This document shows positions 3,630 through 37,765 of a stretch of 64,000 nucleotides of DNA, one piece after another (positions within the stretch are counted from its first letter, which is position 1; the number at the start of each line of letters is the position of its first letter). Below the pieces are notes generated by a model. That model was not told the DNA's origin, searched no databases, and worked only from the letters and a program-made list of their open reading frames with translations. The stretch is from positions 124,001 through 188,000 of IMG/VR virus record IMGVR_UViG_3300024308_000188. One strand, given 5' to 3'. The translations under genes and the position numbers were made by a program.

Positions 3630-3687
3630 AACTGATCCAAGTGTGTCAAAAATAGCTATATACATGATCCTACATTTTTGCTATAAT
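3630..3687 (+). promoter_or_regulatory. conserved composite promoter, copy 1
   Basis: ACTGATCCAAGTGTGTCAAAAA, then 32 nt from TGTCAA to TATAAT (3682-3687). Confidence 0.8.
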
Positions 3688-3726
3688 AGGCACATTGAAA
3701 CAGCGAAGAATCTACGAGGTATTAAA

Positions 3727-4053
3727 ATGAAAGTGTCGGTATCAAATAAAAAGTTTGTTAGAAGCTGCGGTGTAGGTTTGACAGAAGTTAAACTGCTGGA
3801 TTTTATTAAATTAGATGCAGCTTTATTGGGAAAAGATCCTTTACTAGATTCTGAAACATTCTATCAGGTTATATCTATTCAGGAGTTAAATAAAAGTTAT
3901 ATTGAAAGTTTGGATGCTTTTTGTCCACAATCTTTCGTACTCGTTCTTTTAGATAACCATGTTCGCAGAACCGCAAAAGGCTCTTTTGAAAAACTGTGTT
4001 TTTCAGTAGAAATAACTGAAGATGAACTTTACAATGTAACAGTTAAGAAGTAA
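3727..4053 (+). CDS. hypothetical protein
   Basis: GAGG RBS before MKVSVSNKK. Confidence 0.7.
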   Translation: MKVSVSNKKFVRSCGVGLTEVKLLDFIKLDAALLGKDPLLDSETFYQVISIQELNKSYIESLDAFCPQSFVLVLLDNHVRRTAKGSFEKLCFSVEITEDELYNVTVKK

Positions 4054-4063
4054 GGAAAAGTTT

Positions 4064-4435
4064 ATGAATGATTTAATTAAAGTAGCACCGGTTGTTGAAG
4101 GTGAGTTGATAGTTGATCCTATTGAATACTCGATTACTATTGAACAAATACAATCTTTTTTAGTCAGGACGATGAATCAACCTGTATCTACACGCATCAG
4201 ATTTTACAATGATGTTATTTTTGAAAAATATTCTTACATTCATTTTGATGAAGAAAACGGATGGCAATTCTATCACGGTCATGATGAAAAGTTTATGCCT
4301 TGGTCTTGGGTAGATGACATTGAAGAAATCTATCGTGATTGTGATATTCAAGAAATACTTGATTACAACGATGGTTGGGTATTTTACGATCTTGACGGTG
4401 GCCGTAATAAACAACTTGTGTTGGGTGATGTATGA
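4064..4435 (+). CDS. hypothetical protein
   Basis: AAGGA RBS; 123 aa. Confidence 0.75.
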   Translation: MNDLIKVAPVVEGELIVDPIEYSITIEQIQSFLVRTMNQPVSTRIRFYNDVIFEKYSYIHFDEENGWQFYHGHDEKFMPWSWVDDIEEIYRDCDIQEILDYNDGWVFYDLDGGRNKQLVLGDV

Positions 4436-4827
4436 TCAAAAAGTTTGTTGATAACCTGCGAAATTACTTTCGGTGGAAAGACGGCAGACAAGGAACCGGA
4501 TATAAAAAGTTTGAGATTTTAATCAGCAAGCGCTTTAATCTGGATTTTCATATTCTGCGCTATGAAGCCGGAAGCAGCATTCCATACCACTTTGATCGTG
4601 TTGGTAAGGATTACGAACACCATAGAATCAACATTGTGATTTTTCCTGCAAAAGTTGGCGGTGAATTTCGTTATGATCAATTCAATAAGTTTGGTCATAA
4701 AAACAAGGTTACACACTTCGGCCCGTTAGTTTATTTTCGACCTGATTTAATTGGACACTCTGTTTCTTACATTGAGTCTGGCACTCGTTATGTATTATCA
4801 ATTGGTTTTCTGAAAAAGGTGAAATAA
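4432..4827 (+). CDS. 2OG-Fe(II) dioxygenase superfamily protein
   Basis: LRYEAGSSIPYHFD (HxD), GGEF, HSVSYIESGTRYVL (distal His and Arg). Confidence 0.82.
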   Translation: MIKKFVDNLRNYFRWKDGRQGTGYKKFEILISKRFNLDFHILRYEAGSSIPYHFDRVGKDYEHHRINIVIFPAKVGGEFRYDQFNKFGHKNKVTHFGPLVYFRPDLIGHSVSYIESGTRYVLSIGFLKKVK

Positions 4828-4828
4828 C

Positions 4829-5444: not shown

Positions 5445-5529
5445 AACTAAACCAAGTGTGTCAAAAATAGGGGTGGCTTCGGCTGCCCTTTTTTGGTATA
5501 ATGTATTCAATGGTTAAGGCAAGAACCAT
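5445..5529 (+). promoter_or_regulatory. composite promoter copy 2 with embedded terminator and AGGCAA leader hairpin
   Basis: CCAAGTGTGTCAAAAA; GGGTGGC-TTCG-GCTGCCC-TTTTTT inside the spacer; TATAAT 5497-5502; ATGGTT-aaggcaag-AACCAT. Confidence 0.85.
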
Positions 5530-5562
5530 GTCAAATCTTGCCAAACATAAGAGAATCTAGTT

Positions 5563-7558: not shown

Positions 7559-8314
7559 ATGCGACAATTATATACCGTACCAAACAAACCTGCTACTGCG
7601 GATTTATCAAGCTTAATAAAGATCATGTATGATCAACAAGCGCGGATTAGTATCTCAGGCAGTTATCTTGGTGAGTGTCTTTATGAACCTGACAGTTTAG
7701 CAACTTTAATAGTTCGTGGCACTATAAAGATTAGTGTTGAAAAAGTTTATCAGTTGTTCAACGTGACTTCACGAAAAATGTTCGTTGAAGAAAACAAGGT
7801 TATCATTATTAATAACTCTTGTCACTTACACGTTGAGCTTATTTGGGATGGTTCGTTTCCGACTATTGACGAAGAACGCATCTACAAAATAAAATGTTTG
7901 TTGAACTGTAGTAATTACAGTCCAGACCCAAGTATATCAGTATCGCCACGAGCGGCACTTGATGTACTGAAAGATGATTTAGAAAATTACATAGATCATC
8001 TGAATGAAGTTTTAGAGTTTGAAGGCAAATCTTATTCTGCACACACTCTGAAAAACTTTAACTATGATATGCGGTTTGGTCTTAATCTTTTTAGCATTCA
8101 AAAAGGATCGCGCATAACATATCTTGACCGTGGCAAGTTGAAATCTGCTACGGTTGTAAATTTCAATCCGGTAAACTTTGCACTGATTAAACAGGAAGGT
8201 ATGCCGACACGAGATCTTCATTTGATCAACATTGAGTTTAAAGAAGGCGGTTATATGTCTTACAAAACTCTTTACTTAAATCAGATTGTCGCAATAGGAG
8301 GCAATAATGAATAG
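7559..8314 (+). CDS. hypothetical protein
   Basis: AAGGA RBS; 251 aa. Confidence 0.75.
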   Translation: MRQLYTVPNKPATADLSSLIKIMYDQQARISISGSYLGECLYEPDSLATLIVRGTIKISVEKVYQLFNVTSRKMFVEENKVIIINNSCHLHVELIWDGSFPTIDEERIYKIKCLLNCSNYSPDPSISVSPRAALDVLKDDLENYIDHLNEVLEFEGKSYSAHTLKNFNYDMRFGLNLFSIQKGSRITYLDRGKLKSATVVNFNPVNFALIKQEGMPTRDLHLINIEFKEGGYMSYKTLYLNQIVAIGGNNE

Positions 8315-8987
8315 CAAACAAAAAATTATTGCGGATAATCTGGTTATGGTTAAACGCATTGCCAACAGTTTAATTGGCAAACTTTCCGCGAGTATACAGC
8401 TGGATGATTTAATCCAAGCTGGTATGCTTGGAATACTGGAGTCGATTGATCGTTATGATTCAAACTCTGGCACTTCTTTTCAAACTTTTGCTGGAATTCG
8501 AGTTTACGGTTCAATGTTAGACGAGGCCAGAAAACTAGGTTGGATTCCTAAAAATGTTTGTGCAGAAGCTCGTAAACTAAATGAAGTGCGTTCTGCATTA
8601 GAGCAGAAGTTTTTGCGCGTTCCAACAAATATTGAAGTTGCTCATGAACTGAATATTTCTATCGAAGAGTTTAATAAACTCGAACGTGAAACACACAGCA
8701 TTCATGTGTTACTTGACAGTGAACTCAATGAAAGCAACTTTGACGGTTTTTGCACTGAAGTGGATTTTGTGGATCGTCAGTGCGAGGTCACAAAGTTAGG
8801 ATCTGCTTTAAAAGTATTCGTATCAAAACTGCCAAAGCAGGAATCTATTGTAGTTAATCTTTACTATATGCGCGATCTTAACATGGAAGAGATTGGAAAT
8901 CGTATGGAACTTTGTGTGCCTCGCATAAGTAATCTTCATAAACAAGCATTGAAAAGAATGCAATTAAACATGCGTTCTTGGGTATAA
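8307..8987 (+). CDS. fliA: RNA polymerase sigma factor, FliA/WhiG (sigma28) family
   Basis: Region 2 LDDLIQAGMLGILESIDRYD..GTSFQTFAGIRVYGSMLDEARKLGWIPK, region 3 PTNIEVAHEL, region 4 LNMEEIGNRMELCVPRISNLHKQALKRM; GGAGG RBS. Confidence 0.9.
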   Translation: MNSKQKIIADNLVMVKRIANSLIGKLSASIQLDDLIQAGMLGILESIDRYDSNSGTSFQTFAGIRVYGSMLDEARKLGWIPKNVCAEARKLNEVRSALEQKFLRVPTNIEVAHELNISIEEFNKLERETHSIHVLLDSELNESNFDGFCTEVDFVDRQCEVTKLGSALKVFVSKLPKQESIVVNLYYMRDLNMEEIGNRMELCVPRISNLHKQALKRMQLNMRSWV

Positions 8988-12879: not shown

Positions 12880-12937
12880 AACTGATCTGAGTGCGTCAAA
12901 AATAGACATAGACGCACTTGGTCATTTTTGGTATAAT
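12880..12937 (+). promoter_or_regulatory. composite promoter copy 3
   Basis: ACTGATCTGAGTGCGTCAAAAA, 32 nt spacing, TATAAT 12932-12937. Confidence 0.78.
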
Positions 12938-13004
12938 GGCATCATACAAACAAGGGAAGTGCTGTACTTTCACATGCACAAAAGTTTGTTAGGAGAAGAA
13001 GTAA

Positions 13005-16981: not shown

Positions 16982-17451
16982 TGAAAAAAGCTGGCAATAG
17001 AATTCAAATAACAGCAGAAGTTCAATCGGTAGTTCGTAGTGTTGACTCTCAATTATCTAAGGCAGTTGACAAAGGATTTATAACAGGACAACAAAAAACA
17101 TTGGCCGTTAATCTGATAGGTCGCTCTGCAAATAAAAGGACTAAGAAGAATCTTGGTATTTTACGGCCATTCAAACATGATACAACGAATAAAGAAATGA
17201 TGGGAGAACGTGATTCTGGAAAAATTGCTTTAAGCTTTCCTTTTGCCTTTGTTGATTGTTACGGAACTTTCTGGCTATGCTGTGATTCAGATACTGGTCT
17301 TTATTTAGAATGCAAGATCGATTCTAAATTTGATACTGTTTACACGCAACGCTTTTATTTAAAGGGCAATACAAAAAGTTGTATAAAGAAACTGTGCCGA
17401 TTCTTAGAATCATCGAACAACTTGGAAACTTCTCTTCGTAATCTGAACTAA
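16981..17451 (+). CDS. hypothetical protein
   Basis: TAATG coupling; 156 aa. Confidence 0.72.
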   Translation: MKKAGNRIQITAEVQSVVRSVDSQLSKAVDKGFITGQQKTLAVNLIGRSANKRTKKNLGILRPFKHDTTNKEMMGERDSGKIALSFPFAFVDCYGTFWLCCDSDTGLYLECKIDSKFDTVYTQRFYLKGNTKSCIKKLCRFLESSNNLETSLRNLN

Positions 17452-17535
17452 ACCAAGTGTGTCAAAAACAGCGGTTGTTATGAATGGCCGCTTTTGGTAT
17501 AATGTCGTCATTGGTAAGGCAAGAGTGTCTACCAA
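17446..17535 (+). promoter_or_regulatory. composite promoter copy 4 with AGGCAA leader hairpin
   Basis: CCAAGTGTGTCAAAAA; -35 TTGTTA, 17 nt, TATAAT 17498-17503; TTGGTA-aggcaagagtgtc-TACCAA. Confidence 0.85.
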
Positions 17536-22393: not shown

Positions 22394-24103
22394 ATGAAAA
22401 GTATCACAGTTCGTATTACTCACCTTATTGCTGTTGGTGAACTTTTTCAATCTCAAACAAACAAAGCTATGGCCGCTATCATCCCAAAAGATGATGCTTT
22501 GCCAACTTACAAAATTGAAACCGATGATTACAGACTGATTGAACAACTTTCTGGCGCTGTACTTTTGGTTCCTAAAAATCCGATTGATGCTGATTGCTCA
22601 AGTACAATTCAGCTGACCGAAATGGAAGTTGGTTATGGTGACTCTATCTATCCGGTTTATTCTGCGGTTACGCATGACAAAAAATCTGGAAAAACTCGTC
22701 CAATCTTTTTTATTGCGGGTATGGTTCAAACAATTTATGGTAGTTCTTTGTTCTTGCCGACTTTGACCGTACCGGCTGATGAAGTTGATATTGCGGCTTT
22801 GGTAAAAGATCCTGAAGAATCTGCAACAGGATTTGAAAAGCCACAGGCTTCATCTTTAGAGTTTATTCCAACAGACGAAGGCGCAAAAGTTGTTGCGCCT
22901 GAACCCGTTGTCGAAAACAGCGAGTCCAATGTAGAACCTGAAGAAGTTGAGTTTGATTTGATTCCAACAACTTCAGCTTTACTCGAAACTGATGCTACTC
23001 AATTGAATAAAGATGCTTTTGATGCCGCTGTTGAAAATTCAGGCTACGCGCATTTGTTTTCTTTGGATAGTTACAAAGTTTACGCGAATATTCAAAACGC
23101 TGAGTTTATCCAACAGTTAACAGAATCTTTAAGAGAAAGCGGTGATGTCAGCGCTTTCATTTATGAAGCTTTTGTTGGCCTTACAACAGACGATACAAGT
23201 TTAGTTTGGGATCAGGAATTTTGCGCCAACTATTTGGCCCCTGTTCTGTCACACTTGACCGCTTTGGCTGAAGGCCAGACGCGCGTTATTAAAGTTAGTA
23301 GTCAGTTTGATTGTACTTCGTTTGAAAGTTTTTGTGCTGCCTTACGAATCATAAAACATTTAAGTCTGCCGTTTGAATCGTCGCTTGATGCTCCAACAGT
23401 TGAAGCTTTCTTGCTTGATACAGCTTATGTAACAAACGAAGTTTTGGGCGCAATCCTAAACATTTATGTTGCGATCAATGAAGGTAAAACTACAACAGCT
23501 TGGTCTAAGCGCGGTAAAGCGTGTATTGTTTTAAGCTTGCTCGGCTTTATTGATGTGAATCCAGAAACACGATTCACAGAAGATGGTGCATTGTATGCTG
23601 TTGACCTGATCCGAACTTATTACACAACAGAAGATCAGTTTGAAGATAGCGGCTGCACTAATTTACTTCGCTATGTTCCTGAAGTTATTGACCAACTTTT
23701 CGAAGCTTTAAAAGTTCGCAAGCTGGTTGACAATCGCTGTTTATCCGAAACATCTATCGAGAAACGCGCTAAAATTGTTCGCGCTGTTTTGAATGATGTT
23801 ATTACAGTGAACGCTTTATCTTCGTGCGTACCAGACGTTTACGAAGCTTTATGTAAAGTTGAAAAACGTCTGTCTGATACTGGAGTTATTGTTGTCGGTG
23901 ATTCATGGTTAGCTCAACTCGAAGCCGCCTTACTTGCGGCTGATGATCTGGATATTGAATTCGCAGAGTATTCCACAAAGACTTTTCCGGTGGCACTGTC
24001 AGTTTGTTCAATCCTTCATCCTGAAATTGAAGTAACTTCTATTAATAGTGTTGATAGCAAAGAACAGCGCGTTAAAAATCTTATTGATGCACTGTTGACC
24101 TAA
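22394..24103 (+). CDS. hypothetical protein, 569 aa
   Basis: AAGGA RBS; long acidic ORF. Confidence 0.82.
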   Translation: MKSITVRITHLIAVGELFQSQTNKAMAAIIPKDDALPTYKIETDDYRLIEQLSGAVLLVPKNPIDADCSSTIQLTEMEVGYGDSIYPVYSAVTHDKKSGKTRPIFFIAGMVQTIYGSSLFLPTLTVPADEVDIAALVKDPEESATGFEKPQASSLEFIPTDEGAKVVAPEPVVENSESNVEPEEVEFDLIPTTSALLETDATQLNKDAFDAAVENSGYAHLFSLDSYKVYANIQNAEFIQQLTESLRESGDVSAFIYEAFVGLTTDDTSLVWDQEFCANYLAPVLSHLTALAEGQTRVIKVSSQFDCTSFESFCAALRIIKHLSLPFESSLDAPTVEAFLLDTAYVTNEVLGAILNIYVAINEGKTTTAWSKRGKACIVLSLLGFIDVNPETRFTEDGALYAVDLIRTYYTTEDQFEDSGCTNLLRYVPEVIDQLFEALKVRKLVDNRCLSETSIEKRAKIVRAVLNDVITVNALSSCVPDVYEALCKVEKRLSDTGVIVVGDSWLAQLEAALLAADDLDIEFAEYSTKTFPVALSVCSILHPEIEVTSINSVDSKEQRVKNLIDALLT

Positions 24104-24160
24104 ACTTTTCTAGGTGTGTCAAAAATGAGTGTTGCCTATTATAGTCTGTTTTGATATAAT
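24102..24160 (+). promoter_or_regulatory. composite promoter copy 5
   Basis: GGTGTGTCAAAAA; -35 TTGCCT, 17 nt, TATAAT 24155-24160. Confidence 0.8.
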
Positions 24161-24186
24161 AGGCACATTCAAACAAAGGAGAAAAC

Positions 24187-24441: not shown

Positions 24442-24444
24442 TAT

Positions 24445-24861
24445 ATGAAAAAAGAAATTGTTGGAATTCCGGCACTTCAAACATACGCCGAGAAGTTCTT
24501 TGCTAAAGTTCCTGATGCTGACTTTCAAACACTCAGGTTATATGCTGAAAAACGTCCGGCCTTTGCTGAGAACTTAATAACAGCTGGAAAAAGTTTGCGC
24601 TATTCATCAAAAGATTACGCAATCACTTTGACTCGCATCAGTGAAAAAGTTTATCAATTACTTTTGGATCGTATTGATTCCGAAGGTAACTCGCAAAAAG
24701 ATTTATACAGACTTACGCCATTCTATGCAATGCGTTTGTTTGCAAGTTTTGCTATGGCTTGTGTTCCACGCAAATCACGCGATCTTGAATTGGTTCTTGA
24801 TCGTCACCAAGCTAGACGAATTGATCCAAGCGTGTCAAAAACAGTGGTTGATCGACACTAA
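24445..24861 (+). CDS. hypothetical protein
   Basis: 138 aa; 3' end carries promoter copy 6. Confidence 0.7.
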   Translation: MKKEIVGIPALQTYAEKFFAKVPDADFQTLRLYAEKRPAFAENLITAGKSLRYSSKDYAITLTRISEKVYQLLLDRIDSEGNSQKDLYRLTPFYAMRLFASFAMACVPRKSRDLELVLDRHQARRIDPSVSKTVVDRH

Positions 24862-24908
24862 GCTTTTTGGTAAAATACAGTCATTGGTTAAGGCAATAAG
24901 GCCACCAG
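24819..24908 (+). promoter_or_regulatory. composite promoter copy 6 with AGGCAA leader hairpin
   Basis: TGATCCAAGCGTGTCAAAAA; -35 TTGATC, 17 nt, TAAAAT 24871-24876; TGGT-taaggcaataaggcc-ACCA. Confidence 0.75.
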
Positions 24909-25714: not shown

Positions 25715-25778
25715 AGTTTTGGCAAAGGTGATTTTATCAAGTCGCCTTTTACGCAAGCTTTAGCAAAAGGATATTTAT

Positions 25779-26030: not shown

Positions 26031-26032
26031 TC

Positions 26033-26090
26033 AACTGATCGAGGTGTGTCAAAAATAGTGGTTGTTATGAGCTACCACTTTTGATATAAT
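26033..26090 (+). promoter_or_regulatory. composite promoter copy 7
   Basis: ACTGATCGAGGTGTGTCAAAAA; TTGTTA, 17 nt, TATAAT 26085-26090; spacer hairpin AGTGGT/ACCACT. Confidence 0.85.
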
Positions 26091-26151
26091 TACACCATCG
26101 AAACAACAGAGAAAGTTTGTCTGAAGTTTCGTTCCCGATAAAAAGTTTGTT

Positions 26152-26241
26152 ACTAAACAAAGTGTGTCAAAAATAGTGGTTGTTATGAGCTGCCACTTTT
26201 AGTATAATGTATACATTGGTTAGGCAATAAAGCTCAGCCAA
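26152..26241 (+). promoter_or_regulatory. composite promoter copy 8 (tandem with copy 7) with AGGCAA leader hairpin
   Basis: ACTAAACAAAGTGTGTCAAAAA; TTGTTA, 17 nt, TATAAT 26203-26208; TTGGTT-aggcaataaagctc-AGCCAA. Confidence 0.85.
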
Positions 26242-26277
26242 AGTAAAAAGTTTATCAATCATTTGAGGATCTCGACC

Positions 26278-26883
26278 ATGATTAAAAAGTTTCCAAAGAA
26301 AGGTGAAAACAAAGCTCCAGTAAGTGTAAAACCTTCTGGTAAAGTTAAACCAAGTGCTAAATTTCCTGCAAAAGATACTCCGGTTAAAAAACCAAAAGCA
26401 AGTATTCCTGTTGCGGTAAGGTCAACTTTAAAAAGTGCTGGCATCGAAGTAAACAACATCGACAACTTAGATGCAAAATCATTAACTCGTGTTCTTTCTG
26501 CCGTAGATCAACTTTCAACTTTGATAAAAGAAAAGTTGGTTGATCTGAAAGGTTCTGGTACTGCCAAAACTGTAAATAAAACAGTGACTGGCAAAGCAAG
26601 TAAAAAGCAAGCGGTAGCGCAGTTCGTTGCTCCATCCACAGAGTTACGAAAGGTTTATCGTGAAGCAGGTTTGAGCGAAACTAAAGATTCGTTCAAGGCG
26701 AATTTAGCCAAAGCTAAAGAATTCGGCGTTGCATTATCAATGTTCAACAAGTCGATATTCGTAGATGATCAGGAACTTCTGGTTTACGGTGTTTCAGTGC
26801 GTGGTGGCGTTTGCCGCTTAATCTGTAAAAATGCCAAAGGCAAGGATGTTCGCGTTGAGTCAGATACTGTAATCAGTTTCTAA
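26278..26883 (+). CDS. basic protein with a K/P-rich N-terminus
   Basis: GAGGA RBS before MIKKFPKKGENKAP. Confidence 0.8.
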   Translation: MIKKFPKKGENKAPVSVKPSGKVKPSAKFPAKDTPVKKPKASIPVAVRSTLKSAGIEVNNIDNLDAKSLTRVLSAVDQLSTLIKEKLVDLKGSGTAKTVNKTVTGKASKKQAVAQFVAPSTELRKVYREAGLSETKDSFKANLAKAKEFGVALSMFNKSIFVDDQELLVYGVSVRGGVCRLICKNAKGKDVRVESDTVISF

Positions 26884-26931
26884 CAAAAAGTTTGTTTGAT
26901 TAATGTGTGGGGCAATCCTGCCCCGACCGTT

Positions 26932-26939
26932 CTGTAAAT
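26932..26939 (+). promoter_or_regulatory. CTGTAAAT candidate phage promoter
   Basis: Intergenic, just after the hairpin GGGGCA/TGCCCC; recurs at 31983, 32652, 50233 and 54376. Confidence 0.5.
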
Positions 26940-26971
26940 ATTTATTTGAATCCAATGTAAGGAAAGTTGAA

Positions 26972-28435: not shown

Positions 28436-28527
28436 TTCTCTAGCTTAAGAGGAAGATGAAGAAGAGGAAGAATCTTTAACCAAGTAAATTGGCGGTAGGA
28501 ATTCCTACCGCCTAATCTGGAAAATTT

Positions 28528-29805: not shown

Positions 29806-29813
29806 AGGACATT

Positions 29814-31964: not shown

Positions 31965-31982
31965 GCTGCTGGTCTGCTAAAA

Positions 31983-31990
31983 CTGTAAAT
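31983..31990 (+). promoter_or_regulatory. CTGTAAAT candidate phage promoter
   Basis: Intergenic; followed by the long leader hairpin GGCAGGTC/GACCTGCC. Confidence 0.5.
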
Positions 31991-32087
31991 ACATAGGCAG
32001 GTCGGGAGGAATTTTAGAATTCTGACCTGCCGATGATAATGTAATAACTGTCGCTTTTGACTAAAATCGCAAAGGAAATTTATAGCT

Positions 32088-32609
32088 ATGTCAAACCAAA
32101 AGAAACTGCCTTTAACCAAAGGCAAAGCCCCTGTAAAAGCTGCCGGTAAAGTACCTGCCAAAGCTCCTGCTACAAAAGTTAAGAAAGCTGGCCAGCCTTC
32201 AATGCTTGATAAGTTTGAAAGCAAACTTTCCAAAATTTCTTTACGCAAGCACAACCCTAAAATGGAATTACGTGTTCGTATTGTTGCGAAACGCACTGCC
32301 CAACACCTGCAAGGTTATTTGCTGAAAATCGAAGGTGAATCTTTTGTTTTCTCACACACAAAACCTCGTTCTTCCAAGCAAACAGTTTCAATCTTTCCAG
32401 CGAAAGATGTAATCATGTACACTGGTGCTGTAGGTGAACGCGCTCAAATCACCGTGATGTCACAAGAAGTTGTTCGTGAAATCAAACGTGCCAATGTTGA
32501 AACTCGCGGTTCTGCCAATGTTATCACAAATCTGGACACTGGTGACGTTACTGTTTTTAATACGTCAAATACTGACGGCTTTGAAATGCAGACCGAACTG
32601 GCCGAGTAA
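32088..32609 (+). CDS. basic protein: K/A/P-rich N-tail plus a small beta domain
   Basis: KKLPLTKGKAPVKAAGKVPAKAPATKVKK; AAGGA RBS. Confidence 0.8.
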   Translation: MSNQKKLPLTKGKAPVKAAGKVPAKAPATKVKKAGQPSMLDKFESKLSKISLRKHNPKMELRVRIVAKRTAQHLQGYLLKIEGESFVFSHTKPRSSKQTVSIFPAKDVIMYTGAVGERAQITVMSQEVVREIKRANVETRGSANVITNLDTGDVTVFNTSNTDGFEMQTELAE

Positions 32610-32651
32610 TTCTTTTCAAGTATTCCCTTAGTTTAGTCTGCTTTGGGAATA

Positions 32652-32659
32652 CTGTAAAT
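32652..32659 (+). promoter_or_regulatory. CTGTAAAT candidate phage promoter
   Basis: Intergenic, abutting the hairpin AGTATTCCC/GGGAATACT. Confidence 0.5.
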
Positions 32660-32721
32660 TCTTTAGTATACCTAAATGGTATAAACAATTTTTTATAACA
32701 GTAGAACATTGGGAAAATATC

Positions 32722-33447
32722 ATGTCAAAGAAAAAGACCGCCGGAAAAACAGTTGCTTCTGCGTTACTGGAATTGCTGACAGTTTGTGTTGAAGAAGGTG
32801 TTATCGAAGCTGATGACGTTGTTGCCGCTGTAGGCGCTCCTGCCGGTAAATCCTCCAAAGGCAAAAAATCCAAAAAGGATGAAGAAGTCGAAGAGGAAGA
32901 AGAGGAAGAAGAGTCTGATGAACCAGACTTTGAAGAAATGAATCTGAAGCAGCTGAAAAAGTTTGCTAAAGACAACGAAATCGAGATCCCTAAAAAGATC
33001 AAAGATGAAGATGACCTGCGCGAGTTTTTAGCTGAGCAGTATTCCGAAGAGGAAGAGGAAGAAGAGGAAGAAGAGGAAGAAGAATCTGATTCTCCTGACT
33101 TCGAGGACATGGATCACAAAGCACTGAAAAAGTTTGTGAAAGAAAATGATCTGGAAGTTCCTGCCAAAGTTCTGAAAGACGAAGATGACCTGCGCGAGTG
33201 GTTGGAAGAAAACTATTCCTCTGACGAAGAAGAGGAAGAAGAGGAAGAAGAGTCTGAAGAACCAGACTTTGAAGAAATGGATTTAAAAGAAATGAAGGCT
33301 TTCGCAAAAGAAAACGATCTTGAGCCGCCTAAGAAGGCGCTGAAGAACGAAGATACTCTGCGTGAGTGGCTGGAAGAAAACTATTCCTCTGACGAAGAAG
33401 AGGAAGAGGAAGAAGAGGAAGAAGAGGAAGAGTGGGAAGAAGATTAA
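32722..33447 (+). CDS. extremely acidic protein with three tandem ~40 aa helical modules separated by poly-Glu
   Basis: 3x PDFE(E/D)M..K.LK.F.K.N.LE.P.K.LK.ED.LREWL.E.YS-E(n). Confidence 0.85.
   Translation: MSKKKTAGKTVASALLELLTVCVEEGVIEADDVVAAVGAPAGKSSKGKKSKKDEEVEEEEEEEESDEPDFEEMNLKQLKKFAKDNEIEIPKKIKDEDDLREFLAEQYSEEEEEEEEEEEEESDSPDFEDMDHKALKKFVKENDLEVPAKVLKDEDDLREWLEENYSSDEEEEEEEEESEEPDFEEMDLKEMKAFAKENDLEPPKKALKNEDTLREWLEENYSSDEEEEEEEEEEEEEWEED
32923..33440 (+). repeat. three ~170 bp direct repeats plus GAAGAGGAA tracts
   Basis: CCAGACTTTGAAGAAATG, GAAGATGACCTGCGCGAG and GAAGAAAACTATTCCTCTGACGAAGAAGAGGAAG recur. Confidence 0.85.
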
Positions 33448-33535
33448 TCCCTGACCTCTAACTAACCTTCTTTAAAATTTAAAGCGATGTGTATTGCATC
33501 GCTTTCCTTTAATTCGCAATAAGAGAAATTGAAAA

Positions 33536-34003
33536 ATGAGTAAACAAGCTATTTCCGCACTGAACAAAAGTGCAACTGCTTCTACAAAGCAAGCCGCTGC
33601 TTTACGCAAACAAGCAGAAGCTTTAGTTAAAGCCGCTGAACAAGCAGAAGCAGTTGCTGCCGCTACAAAACAGCAAGCCGAAGCTTTAGCAGGTAATCCA
33701 GCTCCTGCCGCAAAAGCTCCTGCCAAAGCTGACAAAAAAGCTCCGGTAGCCGATAAGAAAGCTCCGGCCAAAGCGGATAAGAAAGCTGACAAAAAAGCTG
33801 ACAAAAAAGCTCCGGCCAAAGCGGATAAGAAAGCTGATAAAAAGTCTGCTGACAAAAAAGCTCCGGCCAAGTCAGACAAGAAAGCTGACAAAAAGCCAGC
33901 TGATAAAAAGTCTGCTGACAAAAAAGCTCCGGCCAAGTCAGACAAGAAAGCTGACAAAAAGCCTTCTACAAAAAAGAAAAATAACGACTTCGATTTTGAA
34001 TAA
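33536..34003 (+). CDS. histone H1-like / AlgP-like Lys-Ala-Pro DNA-condensing protein
   Basis: N-terminal Ala-rich coiled coil followed by repeated KKAPAKADKK / KADKK units. Confidence 0.8.
   Translation: MSKQAISALNKSATASTKQAAALRKQAEALVKAAEQAEAVAAATKQQAEALAGNPAPAAKAPAKADKKAPVADKKAPAKADKKADKKADKKAPAKADKKADKKSADKKAPAKSDKKADKKPADKKSADKKAPAKSDKKADKKPSTKKKNNDFDFE
33712..33963 (+). repeat. tandem imperfect repeats encoding KKAPAK(A/S)DKK
   Basis: AAAGCTCCGGCCAA, GCTGACAAAAA and GATAAGAAAGC repeated. Confidence 0.85.
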
Positions 34004-34025
34004 TAAATTTTAGTCGTTATAAAAC

Positions 34026-34050
34026 AAAAGCCGCTTCTTGCGGCTTTTTT
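34026..34050 (+). terminator. intrinsic terminator
   Basis: AAAAGCCGC-ttctt-GCGGCTTTTTT. Confidence 0.85.
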
Positions 34051-34082
34051 CGTAAAAGTTCTCTAGCGAATGGAATTGAGAA

Positions 34083-34511
34083 ATGAACACGAGTTTGGCT
34101 CATGTAACCAATAATCTGCTTCACATAAAAGATCCTGTTGAGCTTTATGCTTACATGGTTTCTTACCGCACTTCGCTTCGCCTCAACTTACTTGAGCTAG
34201 AGCAACAAAAAACTGAACAAACAAACTTAGTTGCAAAGGGAAATAGAATCCTTACTAAAAACAAGGACAATCTAGATCCAGAAGATATTGCAATTTGGGA
34301 AGGTTCAGTATCTTGCGCCAAAGCCTCTTTGGAAATTCTAAAAGTTAGTCTGATGGAAACCTCTATGGTTCTTGATGCTGTTAATGCAAATATTTCCTTG
34401 CTAGGGAAACATTATAATCTCAGCGAAGAAAAGATTTTATCTACTCAGATTGATAGCATTAACGAATATTTCCGAAAATGTTTGGGGATAACTTTAAATG
34501 CCGAGCATTAA
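34083..34511 (+). CDS. hypothetical coiled-coil protein
   Basis: 142 aa ORF. Confidence 0.7.
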   Translation: MNTSLAHVTNNLLHIKDPVELYAYMVSYRTSLRLNLLELEQQKTEQTNLVAKGNRILTKNKDNLDPEDIAIWEGSVSCAKASLEILKVSLMETSMVLDAVNANISLLGKHYNLSEEKILSTQIDSINEYFRKCLGITLNAEH

Positions 34512-34875
34512 AAAGCGCTTGACTTCTTTGCAGAATCAAGGAACTTCGTGGTTTGAAAAGTTTGAGGCTAAGGTTGATGTTTTCCGGCAAGATGTTTTCC
34601 GAGCTTTTATTTTGGATGGTTATATTTTCCTGATAACAGCTACAGGTAACTCAATCACAGCACCTATTGAAATTGTCGCCACCGTTCTTGACGAAAATTT
34701 TTCTCAGATACCAGTCAAGTTGGATTCTTCTGATCTGAAATTGGTTAATGCTTATGTAAAAGTTCTTAACCTTATTTCTTCTGGAAGATTACCAGATGCT
34801 GATCCAGATCTGACTTCAAAAATAATTCAAGTGTTGGAGTCTCGTTATTTCAATACAAATAACAATACGCCTTAA
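34498..34875 (+). CDS. hypothetical protein
   Basis: Overlapping start; 125 aa. Confidence 0.7.
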   Translation: MPSIKKRLTSLQNQGTSWFEKFEAKVDVFRQDVFRAFILDGYIFLITATGNSITAPIEIVATVLDENFSQIPVKLDSSDLKLVNAYVKVLNLISSGRLPDADPDLTSKIIQVLESRYFNTNNNTP

Positions 34876-34887
34876 GGAAAGATCCCA

Positions 34888-36870
34888 ATGGCTAAAGCAA
34901 AAGCAAAATCTGCAAATACTTATGATGAAGATAGTATTCAGGTTCACAAAGGTTTAGCTGGTGTTAGATTAAACGCTGGCATGTACATGGGTGAGCTTGG
35001 CGATTCAATGATGTATCGCATGGGCAAAGAAGCTGTTGAAAACAGCCGCGATGAATACGAAGCTGGACGCAACAACGCAATCTATGTAGCCTTTAATAAC
35101 AAAACAAGTGAATACGTTTTTGCCGACTGCGCTCAAGGTATTCCTGTTGGAATGAAAACAGTTGAAGGTAAAAAAGTAAGCGCATTAACAGTAATTCTTA
35201 CTGAACTTCATGCTGGCGGAAAATTTGATGTAAAAGCTTATCAGACTTCAGGTGGTACGCACGGTGTTGGTATTTCTGCGGTCAATGCTTTATCAAAAGA
35301 ACTTGAGGTCTGGACTTGTCGTGAAGATCAGTGGTACTACCAAAGTTTTTCATGCGGAAAAGAAACCAGTCCTGTTAAAAAGGTTCCAGACACTTTCCTC
35401 AAGAAAAAGTTTGGTTATCTTTTGCCGCTCAAGAAAAAGTTTAAGCGACTTGGCACTATCATTCGCTTGGTTCCAGATCAAAGCGTGATAAGCGTTGATG
35501 CTAGTCGTACCTCAAAACTTAAAACATATACCCAAGCTGTTTTGGAAGAACAAAAGTTTGCTGATTATTTAAAGTTCATGAGTACCATGAATAGCAAGCT
35601 TTATATCGGTTTCCTAAACCTTGAAACAAACAAAGAACAGGTTTTCTACAATGATAAAGGTTTGGGTGCTGTAGTCAGTTCAATAATTTCTGATCATGAT
35701 TTAGAGCCTTTGGGTAAGCCATTCGAGTTCGATGGCTCAAGCCTGAAAGTTGCTATTCAATGGTCTAATCACTATGACAGTGATCTGTTCAGAAGTTATG
35801 TAAATAGTAGTCCAACAATAGATCATGGTACGCATGTAAATGGTTTCCGTGCGGCCATGTCAAAAGCTTTGAAAAACTATCTGCCCAAAAAAGCAGGTAA
35901 GTTTAAGCCAGAAGATCTTTATGTTGGCGCAGTTGCTATTATCAACTGGAAAATGAACAGCGCTCAATTTAGTGGTCAGGTAAAAGATAAACTGGTATCT
36001 AAAATCGATAACGAAGTTTGTGATTTACTGACTCAACCATTAACCGATTTTTTTGCAAAGAACAAAACATTAGCCAAGCAGATTATAAAACGCGCAAGTG
36101 ATGTTGCGGCTTCCCGTGAAGATCTTGCTAAAACAATGAAAGGCATGAGCGAAGTTAAAAAAGGTGGAAGTAAGCTGCCGATAAAACTTTATGAAGCTCC
36201 AGATTGTAAACCGCATGAGCGTGAGCTGTATTTTGTCGAAGGCGATTCGGCTGGCGGTACTGCCAAAAATGCTCGTGGCTTTAATCAGGAAGTTTTAAAA
36301 CTTGGCGGTAAAATTCCAAACGCATTGAATGTTAGTCTAAGTGCCTTACTTTCAAATGACCGCATTCAAGATATGCTGAACAGTTTGGGAGTTGACATAA
36401 AAAGTTTGGATGTTAAAGCTGATAATCCTACATTCAGTACAAAGAATCTGCGAGTTGCTGTTGCAATGTTGCTTGCTGATGCTGATGCTGATGGATCTCA
36501 CATTAACGTACTTATCACCGCATTTTTCTATAAACTTATGCCCGACTTTATTAAAGAAGGTCGTTTGTTTGTTGTTGACGCTCAATTGTACAACGCACTC
36601 GTTAATGGTGTGCATTACAGCGGAAACACAATGGAAGAGTGTTTAGCTAAGTTACCAAAAAATGCTCCGAAGGGAAGTGTGTTCCGTGCAAAAGGTTGGG
36701 GAGAGACAGATGCAGATTTACTTGAAGCCATAGCATTTGATATTAACAACAGAAAGTTGATTCAAATTGAATATGGCAAAGTTCAAGAAGATCTTGCGTT
36801 TTACAGATCAGTTGTAGGTGAAGATGCCTCTGCCAGACGGCAATTGTTGGGGTTAAGTTCCAACGATTAA
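34888..36870 (+). CDS. gyrB: type IIA topoisomerase, GyrB/ParE-like subunit
   Basis: GHKL ATPase (EAVENSRDE, D..QGIP, LHAGGKFD, SGGTHGVGISAVNALS), TOPRIM EGDSAGG and DADADGSHI, KGWGE. Confidence 0.95.
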   Translation: MAKAKAKSANTYDEDSIQVHKGLAGVRLNAGMYMGELGDSMMYRMGKEAVENSRDEYEAGRNNAIYVAFNNKTSEYVFADCAQGIPVGMKTVEGKKVSALTVILTELHAGGKFDVKAYQTSGGTHGVGISAVNALSKELEVWTCREDQWYYQSFSCGKETSPVKKVPDTFLKKKFGYLLPLKKKFKRLGTIIRLVPDQSVISVDASRTSKLKTYTQAVLEEQKFADYLKFMSTMNSKLYIGFLNLETNKEQVFYNDKGLGAVVSSIISDHDLEPLGKPFEFDGSSLKVAIQWSNHYDSDLFRSYVNSSPTIDHGTHVNGFRAAMSKALKNYLPKKAGKFKPEDLYVGAVAIINWKMNSAQFSGQVKDKLVSKIDNEVCDLLTQPLTDFFAKNKTLAKQIIKRASDVAASREDLAKTMKGMSEVKKGGSKLPIKLYEAPDCKPHERELYFVEGDSAGGTAKNARGFNQEVLKLGGKIPNALNVSLSALLSNDRIQDMLNSLGVDIKSLDVKADNPTFSTKNLRVAVAMLLADADADGSHINVLITAFFYKLMPDFIKEGRLFVVDAQLYNALVNGVHYSGNTMEECLAKLPKNAPKGSVFRAKGWGETDADLLEAIAFDINNRKLIQIEYGKVQEDLAFYRSVVGEDASARRQLLGLSSND

Positions 36871-36882
36871 GAGGATCGTGAA

Positions 36883-37272
36883 ATGGGACAACGCTACTAT
36901 GCTCTAATGGACTTAAGCTTTATTCCAATAAAGATGAATCCAGATCACATGCGAAATAATAGTTTGACTGTGTTTTGGGTTCGACTTTCATTTATCAACA
37001 CAAAGATTAAACGGGCCGCTTTGATTGTACTTAGTAATGATGGTACAATCGTAAAAAGTGTTTGGCCCACAAAATCGAAAACAATATCTTCAGTTATATT
37101 GAATGTGTTTGAGAGAACTTCTCTTGATGGTGACGATTGGAATTGGGACGAGCTTTTAAAAATAAGTCTGGCGCGAAAGCGTATGATTCAGTATTATGGA
37201 TCAAGAGAGTCTTATCGCAGACGTATTGCTTTGCTTCCAGTTACGCAAAATAGTTTGCATAATATTTGTTGA
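36883..37272 (+). CDS. hypothetical protein
   Basis: GAGGA RBS; 129 aa. Confidence 0.7.
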   Translation: MGQRYYALMDLSFIPIKMNPDHMRNNSLTVFWVRLSFINTKIKRAALIVLSNDGTIVKSVWPTKSKTISSVILNVFERTSLDGDDWNWDELLKISLARKRMIQYYGSRESYRRRIALLPVTQNSLHNIC

Positions 37273-37281
37273 GGAAATTGC

Positions 37282-37707
37282 ATGATTAAAAAACAAATTG
37301 TATTCATGTATATGGCTCAAGGTGTAGTCGAAGAAAGTTGTCGATGGATAAAAGCTGAACTTGAAGTCAACGACAATCCTAAAAAATTGTTGGAAACTCG
37401 ATTGCAGTGTATGGCCTTAGCTATTGTGGATGCGAACGGATTTTTCATAAAACGCCCTCCACAAAATATTATTGGTAGCGTTTCCCGTGTTTACACTACA
37501 GGTCTTTATTGGTTGGGTAAGAATAGTAAATTCCTGACAGACACGTTGCTTAATGAATTGAGTGAAAAGAAAACTCTTTCAACATTAGGACTGGACTCTG
37601 TGAGAGCATATGTTTCTTATTTGAGTTCAAATAATCCGTATGATCAAGTTCAATTCACTTCATTCCTGAAAGAAGTGTTACCTAAAGGAACACCATCTTT
37701 AGTATGA
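37282..37707 (+). CDS. hypothetical protein
   Basis: GAGGA RBS; 141 aa. Confidence 0.7.
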   Translation: MIKKQIVFMYMAQGVVEESCRWIKAELEVNDNPKKLLETRLQCMALAIVDANGFFIKRPPQNIIGSVSRVYTTGLYWLGKNSKFLTDTLLNELSEKKTLSTLGLDSVRAYVSYLSSNNPYDQVQFTSFLKEVLPKGTPSLV

Positions 37708-37765
37708 ACTGATCCAAGTGTGTCAAAAATCAGGGGTTTATTTCAATACCTTATTTTGGTATAAT
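37707..37765 (+). promoter_or_regulatory. composite promoter copy 9 (upstream of gyrA)
   Basis: AACTGATCCAAGTGTGTCAAAAA; 33 nt from TGTCAA to TATAAT 37760-37765. Confidence 0.78.

What the first reader, a model, noticed from the sequence alone, without database searches (positions are those of the whole stretch)
3630..37765. Nine copies of a fixed-geometry composite promoter element
Copies at 3630, 5445, 12880, 17446, 24102, 24819, 26033, 26152 and 37707 share A(A)CT(G/A)A(T/A)CCAAGTG(T/C)GTCAAAAA. TGTCAA lies exactly 32 nt (33 in one copy) before TATAAT. The -35 at 17 nt spacing is variable (TTGTTA x3, TTGATC, TTGCCT, TAGACG, TATACA), while the upstream ~20 bp box is the most conserved part. 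The spacer is bracketed by CAAAAA...TTTTG(G/A) and often folds (GGGTGGC-TTCG-GCTGCCC-T6; AGTGGT/ACCACT), so one element may end the upstream operon and start the next. This implies a dedicated activator site, or hairpin/cruciform-assisted sigma70 promoters.
Basis: partly seen in the sequence, partly recalled or inferred. Interest (0 to 1): 0.76.

Follow-up and report, generated by a model that had tools for sequence, protein, structure and literature searches.

The report
Early promoter cassettes of jumbo phage
The nine repeats are real: they are near-identical host-type (sigma-70, extended -10) promoter cassettes of an uncultured ~320-kb phage, each with a 23-bp upstream box at a fixed distance. 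They are most likely the phage's early promoters, a new variant of a known kind of phage regulatory cassette, and what reads the box is unknown.

Summary
Nine + strand copies of AACTGATC-N4-TGTGTCAAAAA sit 29 nt (30 in one) before TATAAT, against 0.16 box matches expected by chance. The window is part of a 214-kb fragment of a jumbo myovirus. A 319.5-kb complete close relative has 13 copies, and these account for 10 of its 13 TGnTATAAT sites.

Each copy is a full sigma-70-type promoter:
- box at -64..-42, ending in an A5 tract at -46..-42;
- a T(T)G -35-like hexamer at 17 bp;
- a T-tract followed by TG at -15/-14;
- TATAAT;
- invariant C(-1) and A(+1).

Pfam profile searches for multisubunit (beta, beta') and T7-type RNA polymerase found nothing; the T7-type control was silent. 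Two phage sigma genes exist, one inside a box-driven operon. Other promoter-like motifs (AACTGTAAAT, ATAATTTA) precede the portal and other genes. So these are probably the early, host-RNAP promoters.

The same box is kept in a relative whose core proteins are only 64-73% identical. Phage NCTB has a different box (AACTTTTTTATCnnGGTACAAAA) with the same geometry.

The spacer hairpin is optional: 4 of 9 copies here, 1 of 11 and 0 of 7 in relatives. Where present it forms an embedded terminator, not a cruciform requirement.

The closest known things are T4 early promoters and PeSL promoter-terminator cassettes. No start site was mapped.

The parts
3630..3694 (+). Promoter cassette 1. Box 3630-3652, -35-like TATACA 3659-3664, TGC+TATAAT 3679-3687, predicted +1 at 3694 (CA). 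33-nt leader to ATG 3727.
   Evidence: no spacer hairpin
5445..5509 (+). Promoter cassette 2. Box 5445-5467 (AACTAAAC variant), TGG+TATAAT, -10 at 5497-5502, +1 at 5509. Heads a 12-gene operon that includes the phage sigma gene 8307-8987.
5469..5494 (+). Embedded intrinsic terminator inside cassette 2: GGGGTGGC-TTCG-GCTGCCC plus T6.
   Evidence: -14.2 kcal/mol, z -3.2
12880..12944 (+). Promoter cassette 3. Box 12880-12902, -35-like TAGACG, -10 at 12932-12937, +1 at 12944. 61-nt leader to ATG 13005.
   Evidence: weak fold
17446..17510 (+). Promoter cassette 4. Box 17446-17468; the stop codon of the upstream gene lies inside the box. -35 TTGTTA, -10 at 17498-17503, +1 at 17510. Embedded terminator hairpin at 17470-17495.
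   Evidence: (-10.4 kcal/mol)
24103..24167 (+). Promoter cassette 5. Box 24103-24125 (AACTTTTC variant), -35 TTGCCT, TGA+TATAAT, -10 at 24155-24160, +1 at 24167. 20-nt leader to ATG 24187.
24819..24883 (+). Promoter cassette 6. Box 24819-24841 overlaps the 3' end of ORF 24445-24861. -35 TTGATC, -10 TAAAAT at 24871-24876, +1 at 24883.
26033..26097 (+). Promoter cassette 7, the upstream member of a tandem pair. Box 26033-26055, -35 TTGTTA, -10 at 26085-26090, +1 at 26097. Embedded hairpin at 26057-26082. No ORF follows.
26097..26200 (+). Predicted ~105-nt non-coding transcript from cassette 7, ended by the terminator hairpin embedded in cassette 8.
   Evidence: fold -27 kcal/mol over 104 nt; tandem arrangement conserved in G003; inferred, not observed as RNA
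26151..26215 (+). Promoter cassette 8. Box 26151-26173, -35 TTGTTA, TAG+TATAAT, -10 at 26203-26208, +1 at 26215. Embedded hairpin at 26175-26200. 63-nt leader to ATG 26278. Heads the operon 26278-37707, which includes the topoisomerase II large subunit.
   Evidence: In four 'RNA-Seq' runs contig depth rises about 3- to over 10-fold from ~26258 onward, though in run X6 the deep contig already begins at 25764.
37707..37772 (+). Promoter cassette 9. Box 37707-37729; its first base is the last base of the upstream stop codon. 30-nt gap, -10 at 37760-37765, predicted +1 at 37772 (T). Precedes the second topoisomerase II (gyrA-like) gene at 37806.
8307..8987 (+). Phage sigma factor gene (226 aa; regions 2, 3 and 4), transcribed from cassette 2. 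Places the cassettes upstream of the phage's own sigma in the cascade.

Best explanation
The nine elements are the early-class promoters of an RNAP-less jumbo myovirus, read by the host's primary-sigma RNA polymerase. There are 13 in the complete genome of a close relative.

Shown from sequence. Every copy carries these parts in one rigid register:
- a bipartite box AACTGATC-N4-TGTGTC at -64..-47;
- an A5 tract at -46..-42;
- a T(T)G -35-like hexamer at 17-bp spacing;
- a T-tract followed by TG at -15/-14;
- TATAAT;
- C(-1)A(+1).

Inferred mechanism. Sigma-70 regions 2, 3 and 4 read the -10, TG and -35 elements. The A5 tract acts as the proximal alpha-CTD (UP) subsite. The G/C-containing, invariant part of the box is read base-specifically by a protein not yet identified, held on one face of the helix. 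That protein would be present at, or very soon after, DNA entry: either a phage-lineage-specific factor or a host factor. It boosts or co-ordinately regulates all early operons.

In about half of the copies a GC-rich hairpin has been placed between the A5 and T-tracts. The same 65 bp then also terminates the upstream transcript a few bases before the next -10 element.

Because the cassettes are near-identical, they also serve as homologous recombination points, as PeSL cassettes do.
For: The motif is genuine. 9 copies are seen against 0.16 expected, all on the coding strand and all directly after upstream stop codons.

They dominate the sigma-70-like sites. In the complete 319.5-kb relative (97-99.5% identical), 10 of 13 TGnTATAAT sites carry the box. 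Nearly all intergenic sites with at least 10 of 13 promoter matches are box promoters. A generic -35/-10 scan of the region is not enriched over shuffles (40 found, 40.8 expected).

Position-specific conservation. C(-1) is 13/13, A(+1) 12/13 and T(-35) 13/13.

The phage appears to lack its own RNAP. No beta or beta' RNAP domain was found in two complete genomes, with controls positive. No T7-type RNAP hit was found either.

Place in the cascade.
- Two phage sigma genes exist, and the 226-aa one lies in the operon of cassette 2.
- A different motif, AACTGTAAAT, precedes the portal gene, the 339-aa sigma gene and others, 20-40 nt before the start codons.
- Box-driven genes are mostly ORFans, plus topoisomerase II, an endonuclease, a NADAR protein and the sigma factor.

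Selection on the box.
- Relative G003 has core proteins 64-73% identical and early ORFans 27-41% identical. It keeps AACTGATC and TGTGTCAAAAA in 11 copies, while the middle 3-4 nt, the spacer and the leaders differ.
- Phage NCTB and contig G004 (NCTB core proteins 47-55% identical) have GGTACAAAA-N26-TGCTATAAT with identical spacing.

Literature. T4 early promoters are described as UP/-35/TGn/-10 promoters with extra consensus regions (PMC2988021). The UP subsites lie at -45..-37 and -58..-45 (PMC2613000).

RNA-library depth. In four wastewater 'RNA-Seq' runs, contig depth is about 3- to over 10-fold higher downstream of cassettes 7 and 8 than over 24.5-25.7 kb.

Recombination.
- One strain joins the -10 of cassette 7 (26090) to the leader of cassette 8 (26223).
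- G002 and G001 lose homology at +14 of a box promoter.
Against: - No transcription start site, strand or timing was measured. The RNA-library evidence comes from unstranded contigs that break at the repeats. In run X6 the deep contig starts about 330 nt upstream of the predicted start.
- The host is unknown, so 'host sigma-70' rests on the consensus alone.
- No box-binding protein was found. The one structure-based test of alpha-CTD binding was not run by the tool.
- The -35 hexamers are weak (3-4 of 6 matches).
- 'Early' is inferred from promoter type and gene content only.
- The recombination role rests on two events.
Confidence: 0.6

Rival explanations
1. Purely RNAP-intrinsic promoters. 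The whole box is an unusual UP-type element contacted only by the alpha-CTDs of the (unknown) host's polymerase, with no extra factor.
For: The box occupies exactly the UP position (-64..-42). The A5 tract at -46..-42 matches the proximal subsite (PMC2613000). In NCTB and G004 the distal half is A/T-rich (T6AT and similar), like a canonical UP element. No binding-protein candidate was found.
Against: UP recognition works through the minor groove of A/T tracts. Here G and C positions (GATC, GTGTGTC) are invariant across 13 + 11 copies and across genomes with 64-73% protein identity. That fits base-specific reading better.
Confidence: 0.25
2. Middle-class promoters. The box is the site of an activator made from earlier phage genes, functionally like T4 MotA/AsiA promoters.
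For: There is a strong -10 with TG, a weak -35 and a highly conserved phage-specific box. Downstream genes include replication-type functions such as topoisomerase II and an endonuclease.
Against: No other sigma-70-like promoter class exists in the genome that could express such an activator first. The box is centred near -53 and a -35-like hexamer is retained, whereas the MotA box is centred at -30 and replaces the -35 (PMC2988021). The phage sigma gene itself depends on a box promoter.
Confidence: 0.12
3. The box is an operator for co-ordinated shut-off. A phage protein made early binds -64..-42 and blocks alpha-CTD contacts, turning off all early operons together.
For: One identical site sits at all 13 early promoters. 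It overlaps the A5/UP position, on which strong early promoters depend. T4 likewise turns down early promoters after a few minutes (PMC2988021).
Against: Most repressors overlap the core promoter. The fixed helical phase relative to the -10 is more typical of activation through protein-protein contact. No candidate protein was found.
Confidence: 0.15
4. The similarity only reflects recent duplication or gene conversion of a promoter cassette (PeSL-like mobile cassette). The box sequence itself has no function.
For: Cassettes fall into sub-families that share leaders (AUUGGUUAAGGCAA or AUUGAAACAA) and upstream flanks. There is evidence of recombination between cassettes.
Against: Within cassettes the spacer, -35 and leader have diverged freely while the box has not. 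The same box persists in G003 at 64-73% protein identity, and the geometry persists in NCTB with another box.
Confidence: 0.08
5. The 23-bp asymmetric box is a promoter for a phage-encoded RNA polymerase (T7- or N4-like). The sigma-70 promoter next to it is separate.
For: The length and asymmetry resemble single-subunit RNAP promoters.
Against: No RNAP gene of any kind was detected in two complete genomes (the T7-type control was silent, so that search is weaker). The box is locked at 29 nt from TATAAT and never occurs alone.
Confidence: 0.03

Closest known systems
Bacteriophage T4 early promoters ('UP/-35/TGn/-10' promoters; PMC2988021)
   Same: Strong host-sigma-70 phage promoters that combine the -35, TGn and -10 elements with an upstream alpha-CTD region. 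They show extra consensus positions beyond the canonical elements, occur many times per genome, and head operons of small early genes.
   Different: The T4 upstream consensus is A/T-rich. Here the upstream part is a bipartite, G/C-containing box (AACTGATC-N4-TGTGTC) with invariant positions. The phage is not T4-like: its terminase is 40% identical to those of Erwinia phage Y3 and Dickeya phage JA11. Nothing was measured.
PeSL (promoter-early stem-loop) cassettes of T4-like myoviruses (PMC2839356, PMC4122927)
   Same: Repeated, well-conserved composite terminator/early-promoter cassettes between small ORFan genes. Tandem copies can recombine and delete the DNA between them. Here one strain has lost the segment between cassettes 7 and 8, and one homology break lies at +14 of a cassette.
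   Different: In PeSLs the stem-loop lies just upstream of the promoter, after an A/T-rich region. Here it lies inside the promoter, between the A5 tract (-46..-42) and the T-tract (-20..-16), covers the -35 hexamer, and is present in only 4 of 9 copies. The constant part here is the box, not the stem-loop.
UP element of rrnB P1-type promoters (alpha-CTD sites; PMC2613000)
   Same: Position (-40 to -60) and an A-tract at the proximal subsite. NCTB-type boxes are A/T-rich in the distal half.
   Different: The distal half in this phage is not A/T-rich and is conserved base by base.
Class I activator-dependent promoters (own knowledge: CRP at -61.5; the P2 Ogr site TGT-N12-ACA near -55; the asymmetric marbox of monomeric MarA/SoxS)
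   Same: A site upstream of the -35 at a fixed helical phase. The two conserved blocks are about one helical turn apart, as with two-HTH monomers.
   Different: There is no dyad symmetry and no match to the CRP, IHF, Fis or marbox RE1 consensus on inspection. No AraC-type or OmpR-type protein is encoded by the phage.
T4 middle promoters (MotA box with AsiA, sigma appropriation; PMC2988021)
   Same: A host -10 (often with TGn) combined with a phage-specific box.
   Different: The MotA box is centred at -30 and replaces the -35. Here the box is centred near -53 and a -35-like hexamer remains.

Membership tests
Sigma-70-type extended -10 promoter | -10 hexamer close to TATAAT | tested here: met
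   TATAAT in 8 of 9 copies, TAAAAT in one
Sigma-70-type extended -10 promoter | TG at -15/-14 | tested here: met
   8 of 9 window copies (26158 has TAG). 10 of the 13 TGnTATAAT sites of the 319-kb genome are box promoters.
Sigma-70-type extended -10 promoter | -35-like hexamer at 16-18 bp | tested here: met
   Met only in weak form, with 3-4 of 6 matches per copy. T at -35 in 13/13, G at -33 in 11/13, 17-bp spacing; TTTAC in G003, TATAC in NCTB.
Sigma-70-type extended -10 promoter | Transcription starts about 7 nt after the hexamer and depends on the primary-sigma holoenzyme | not testable with these tools
   Only indirect support: C(-1)A(+1) is conserved at that place, and depth rises downstream of cassettes 7 and 8 in unstranded contigs.
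UP element | A/T-rich sequence at -40..-60 with proximal and distal subsites | tested here: inconclusive
   The A5 tract at -46..-42 fits the proximal subsite. The distal part (AACTGATCCAAGTGTGTC) is not A/T-rich. The NCTB/G004 distal halves are A/T-rich (PMC2613000).
UP element | Bound by the alpha-CTD | not testable with these tools
   The complex-prediction job was not folded.
PeSL cassette | Conserved sigma-70-like early promoter repeated between small variable genes | tested here: met
PeSL cassette | Stem-loop terminator just upstream of the promoter in the cassette | tested here: not met
   The hairpin lies inside the promoter and only in 4 of 9 copies (6/13, 1/11 and 0/7 in relatives).
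PeSL cassette | Cassettes coincide with indels or replacements between close relatives | tested here: inconclusive
   Two events: the 26090-to-26223 joint in run X6 and the G002/G001 break at +14 of one promoter. About ten other breakpoints in that comparison are not at box promoters.
PeSL cassette | Occurs in T4-like myoviruses | tested here: not met
   The nearest terminases (40% identity) are from the Erwinia Y3 / Dickeya JA11 group. No T4-type late or middle apparatus was looked for.
T4 middle (MotA-dependent) promoter | Activator box centred at -30 that replaces the -35 | tested here: not met
   The box spans -64..-42 and a -35-like hexamer is present.
Class I activator site | Site upstream of the -35 at a fixed helical phase | tested here: met
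   29 nt from the A5 tract to the -10 in 12/13 (G001), 10/11 (G003) and 7/7 (NCTB) copies.
Class I activator site | A cognate DNA-binding protein exists | tested here: inconclusive
   No AraC-type (PF12833) or OmpR-type (PF00486) domains in G001, G003 or NCTB. The box is not enriched in 185,579 prokaryote genomes: 17 scattered single hits, about the number my own estimate expects by chance. Other folds were not searched.
Intrinsic terminator | GC-rich hairpin followed by a T-run | tested here: met
   Met for copies 5452, 17453, 26040 and 26158 only.
Single-subunit phage RNAP promoter | The phage encodes the polymerase | tested here: not met
   No PF00940 match, though the control was silent. 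No beta or beta' domains, with controls positive.

The most novel reading that the evidence does not exclude
The invariant, non-A/T box is the operator of an unknown factor, either lineage-specific and phage-delivered or made immediately on entry. The factor docks on the host polymerase (alpha-CTD) at all early promoters. It has co-evolved with the box: the AACTGATC..TGTGTCAAAAA clade against the GGTACAAAA clade. This would be a new early-promoter recognition system in RNAP-less jumbo phages, combined with terminators built into the promoter spacer.
Probability: 0.3. Interest if true: 0.65.

Novelty: new variant of a known kind. Interest (0 to 1): 0.45.

Why it matters
It yields a clean, testable promoter regulon for an uncultured lineage of ~260-320-kb phages that lack detectable polymerase genes. 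There are 13 sites, a precise predicted +1 for each, and a three-motif cascade involving two phage sigma factors.

The box is a ready bait for finding the factor that marks early promoters, by DNA pull-down or by covariation across relatives.

The terminator-inside-a-promoter layout is a compact insulator design. It may interest those who study transcription interference and those who build synthetic operons.

It also extends the PeSL idea, that regulatory cassettes serve as recombination points, beyond T4-like phages. That extension rests on only two events here.

Tried and rejected
- Megablast of 8 kb against GenBank phages gave no match. tblastn of the 716-aa protein gave no match.
- The search for related loci with a single protein returned only the near-identical relative.
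- Erwinia phage Y3 and Dickeya phage JA11 have no TTTGnTATAAT sites. The four sites in Yersinia phage fHe-Yen9-02 have no common upstream box.
- My pattern was mis-specified and found nothing useful.
It was useful only for finding G003 and G004.
Single-sequence folds were used instead.
- Complex prediction (E. coli alpha-CTD with the box DNA) was not folded. It is no evidence either way.
- A divergent promoter using the inverted TTGACA inside the box was rejected. No conserved -10 lies 17 bp away and no minus-strand genes follow (inspection).
- CRP, IHF, Fis, Pho-box and marbox readings of the box were checked by eye and do not fit. This rests on consensus sequences recalled from memory.
- Rfam found only a tRNA.
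- AAAGTTTG in leaders is enriched about 6-fold near the cassettes, but it is also very common genome-wide. It was not pursued.

Full report
OBSERVATION

The 16-mer core CCAAGTGYGTCAAAAA, with up to 2 mismatches, occurs nine times in the window. Dinucleotide shuffles give 0.16 expected matches and none of 100 reaches nine.

Printing the copies shows the full composite:
- a 23-bp box, AACTGATCCAAGTGTGTCAAAAA, with AACTAAAC and AACTTTTC variants;
- then 29 nt (30 in copy 37707);
- then TATAAT (TAAAAT in copy 24819).

Numbering TATAAT as -12..-7 gives this layout:
- the box spans -64..-42 and its A5 tract is -46..-42;
- a hexamer at 17-bp spacing starts with T in every copy, and with TTG in most;
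- a T-tract runs into TG at -15/-14 in 8 of 9 copies;
- C(-1)A(+1) lies exactly 7 nt after the hexamer in 8 of 9 copies.

WHAT GENOME THIS IS

The window is bases 124001-188000 of a 214.5-kb IMG/VR viral contig, G000, estimated 85% complete. No further true copy exists in it.

It encodes a 983-aa large terminase, a portal protein, a tail sheath, topoisomerase II subunits, an NAD-dependent ligase, a DNA polymerase and a UvsX-like recombinase.

The nearest cultured relatives are distant. The terminase is 40% identical to those of Erwinia phage Y3, Dickeya phages JA11/JA13/JA29 and Erwinia phage Yoloswag. The topoisomerase is 50% identical to that of 'Phage NCTB'.

An exact-word scan of IMG/VR found a complete 319.5-kb genome, G001, which is 97-99.5% identical to G000. 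It also found an 80.8-kb fragment, G002.

G001 has 13 copies, all on one strand. Nine are the window's copies. The other four lie in the ~105 kb that G000 lacks.

THEY ARE THE GENOME'S SIGMA-70-TYPE PROMOTERS

In the 319.5-kb genome TGnTATAAT occurs 13 times, and 10 of these carry the box at the fixed distance. Among intergenic sites with at least 10 of 13 matches to TTGACA-N16-18-(TG)-TATAAT, almost all are box promoters. A generic -35/-10 scan of 20 kb of the window finds no more sites than shuffles do (40 found, 40.8 expected). The cassettes are among its best hits.

Profile searches find no beta or beta' RNA polymerase domains in the complete genomes G001 and G003, with positive controls. 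There is no T7-type polymerase hit either, but the control for that search was silent.

Two sigma-factor genes are present.
- One is a 226-aa protein with regions 2, 3 and 4, at window 8307-8987. It lies inside the operon headed by the cassette at 5445.
- The other is a 339-aa protein outside the window, matching phrog_17569 at 1e-111.

K-mer enrichment in upstream regions reveals two other promoter-like motifs.
- (A)AACTGTAAAT(C/A) lies 20-40 nt before start codons on both strands. It precedes the portal gene and the 339-aa sigma gene, among others.
- ATAATTTA lies mostly before minus-strand genes.

Genes behind box promoters are mostly small ORFans. The exceptions are the sigma factor, topoisomerase II, an endonuclease, a NADAR-domain protein and a 2OG oxygenase.

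The simplest reading is a cascade. Host sigma-70 RNAP uses the box promoters first. Phage sigma factors then redirect it to the other motifs. This ordering is an inference; no timing data exist. A review states that RNAP-lacking jumbo phages commonly encode sigma homologues for phage-specific promoters (PMC13282480). PaBG-group phages are reported to encode such sigmas (PMC7412058).

RNA EVIDENCE (WEAK)

Four wastewater 'RNA-Seq' runs hold 35-39% of the words of window 23800-27800. Their contigs were laid on 23500-29400.

In all four, depth is about 3- to over 10-fold higher from ~26258 onward than over 24485-25666. For example it is 17.7 against 0 in X5, and about 116 against 0-5 in X6. That is hard to explain by phage DNA alone. 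It fits strong transcription from the tandem cassettes at 26033 and 26151, whose predicted starts are 26097 and 26215.

The limits are serious. The contigs are unstranded and break at the repeated box. In X6, a 93-97% identical strain, the deep contig begins at 25764. This is consistency, not a mapped start.

THE BOX IS UNDER SELECTION AND IS LINEAGE-SPECIFIC

A 286.6-kb relative, G003 (GC 34.6%), has core proteins 64-73% identical to those of this phage and early ORFans only 27-41% identical. It nevertheless carries 11 cassettes with AACTGATC and TGTGTCAAAAA intact. The 3-4 nt between the two blocks, the spacer, the -35 (TTTAC there) and the leaders all differ.

So the box is bipartite, with its blocks centred about 12 bp apart. 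It is conserved by selection, not by recent copying.

Phage NCTB (47-55% protein identity, GC 42%) has 7-8 promoters of the form AACTTTTTTATCnnGGTACAAAA-N26-TGCTATAAT. The 232-kb contig G004 keeps GGTACAAAA with a variable A/T-rich distal half. The box length and the distance to the -10 are the same as here.

The shared skeleton is therefore GKKWC-A4-5 at about -51..-42, plus N26, plus TGnTATAAT, with a lineage-specific distal half.

The exact bipartite box gives 17 single, taxonomically scattered hits in one genome each of 185,579 prokaryote species. That is about the number I estimate by chance. None has the promoter downstream. It is therefore not a repeated cellular motif.

WHAT THE BOX DOES (INFERENCE)

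The box lies where alpha-CTDs contact UP elements, proximal at -45..-37 and distal at -58..-45 (PMC2613000). The A5 tract fits the proximal subsite.

UP recognition is A/T-tract and minor-groove based, whereas here G and C positions are invariant. The strict 29-nt register holds in 12/13, 10/11 and 7/7 copies in three genomes. That argues for a contact with polymerase on one face of the helix.

I therefore favour a sequence-specific reader in addition to the alpha-CTD.

No other sigma-70-like promoters exist that could express a phage activator first.

I could not identify it. AraC-type and OmpR-type domains are absent from the three genomes. The alpha-CTD/DNA complex job was not folded by the tool.

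THE HAIRPIN

Folding A5 plus spacer gives stable hairpins in only four window copies: 5452, 17453, 26040 and 26158. Their energies are -7.9 to -14.2 kcal/mol, with z of -2.2 to -3.2. The other five fold at 0 to -5.1 kcal/mol; four are like shuffles (z >= -1.7) and copy 12887 is borderline (z -1.95).

Across genomes the counts are 6/13 in G001, 1/11 in G003 and 0/7 in NCTB. The hairpin is thus an optional insert between two constant promoter features, the A5 tract and the T-tract. Where present, it makes a canonical terminator: a GC stem followed by a T-run that ends at about -15. It also includes the -35 hexamer.

It rejects a cruciform requirement.

Upstream genes stop immediately before or inside the box. 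One cassette, at 24819, overlaps the end of an ORF.

COMPARISON WITH KNOWN SYSTEMS

The closest functional analogues are T4 early promoters. They are described as UP/-35/TGn/-10 promoters with additional consensus regions (PMC2988021).

The closest structural analogues are the PeSL 'promoter-early stem-loop' cassettes of T4-like phages. These are composite terminator/promoter repeats between ORFans that recombine with one another (PMC4122927, PMC2839356).

PeSL-like behaviour is seen here twice.
- The strain in run X6 joins the -10 of cassette 7 (26090) to the leader of cassette 8 (26223), removing the 132 nt between them.
- G002 and G001 lose homology at +14 of one box promoter, with an unrelated ~0.7-0.8-kb segment following.

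Most other indels in that comparison are not at box promoters.

The differences from PeSLs are:
- the stem-loop lies inside the promoter, not upstream of it;
- the stem-loop is facultative;
- the constant part is a non-A/T box;
- the phage is not T4-like.

Hence the rating: a new variant of a known kind.

VERDICT

The elements are promoters with high confidence, about 0.9 on sequence grounds. They are probably the early, host-RNAP class, about 0.65.

Noticed in passing
window 31982, 32651, 54375, 55024 and others; 52 CTGTAAAT sites in G001, of which about 25 are intergenic: A second promoter-like motif, (A)AACTGTAAAT(C/A), lies 20-40 nt upstream of start codons on both strands. It precedes the portal gene and the 339-aa sigma gene. 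It resembles a T4-late-type -10-only element (TATAAATA) and is probably read by a phage sigma factor. NCTB has AACTGTAAA before its gyrA-like gene.
   Followed up: partly
window 49950 (+), 62123 (-), 39479 (+); 15 intergenic sites in G001: A third upstream motif, ATAATTTA, lies mainly before minus-strand genes. It may mark a third promoter class.
   Followed up: partly
window 26033-26215: Two cassettes sit in tandem, 118 nt apart, with no ORF between them. They predict a ~105-nt structured RNA ended by the terminator embedded in the second cassette. The tandem arrangement is conserved in G003 (170 nt apart, different sequence) and absent from the strain in run X6.
   Followed up: partly
window 5509-5535, 17510-17538, 24883-24910, 26215-26242: Four leaders begin at +1/+2 with a stem-loop, AUUGGUUA-AGGCAA-..., at -5 to -11.5 kcal/mol. 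The 3' arm differs between copies and orthologues while pairing is kept. NCTB and G004 leaders also start with hairpins. This may be 5'-end protection against decay, or a protein site.
   Followed up: partly
window 39438-39515: After the second topoisomerase gene there are two hairpins, one a perfect palindrome (GAGGATTATAATTTATAATCCTC). There is also a box-less TGTTATAAT on the minus strand, pointing back into the gene. This may be a bidirectional terminator or an antisense promoter.
   Followed up: no
G000:118674-121556 (outside the window; L062:10674-13556): A 960-aa UvsX-like recombinase matches its family profile over residues 43-940, with an endonuclease-like insert at about residues 461-655. 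It looks like an intein or homing-endonuclease insertion.
   Followed up: no
window 20593-21222 and 4432-4827: A NADAR-domain protein (5e-19) and a 2OG-Fe(II) oxygenase-like protein are encoded in box-driven operons. They are candidate counter-defence or DNA-modification genes.
   Followed up: no
whole genomes G001, G003, NCTB: The distal half of the box contains GATC. GATC is not avoided in G001 or G003 (1593 and 1566 sites against about 1100 and 920 expected). It is under-represented two-fold in NCTB, whose box has no GATC.
   Followed up: partly
window 32900-33410: Repeated short hairpin-forming segments (TTCCTCTTCTTCGTCAGAGGAA twice, AGTCTGGTTCWTCAGACT twice) lie inside ORF 32722-33447. 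This indicates an internal duplication in an acidic 241-aa protein.
   Followed up: no
window 525-596: A tRNA gene (Rfam RF00005, 59.6 bits).
   Followed up: no
G001rc 106-190 kb compared with G002: About eleven single-ORF-sized indels or replacements (0.5-0.8 kb) separate two ~93-99% identical genomes. This is a hyperplastic ORFan region. One insertion boundary abuts a CTGTAAAT motif (133768 against 133774).
   Followed up: partly
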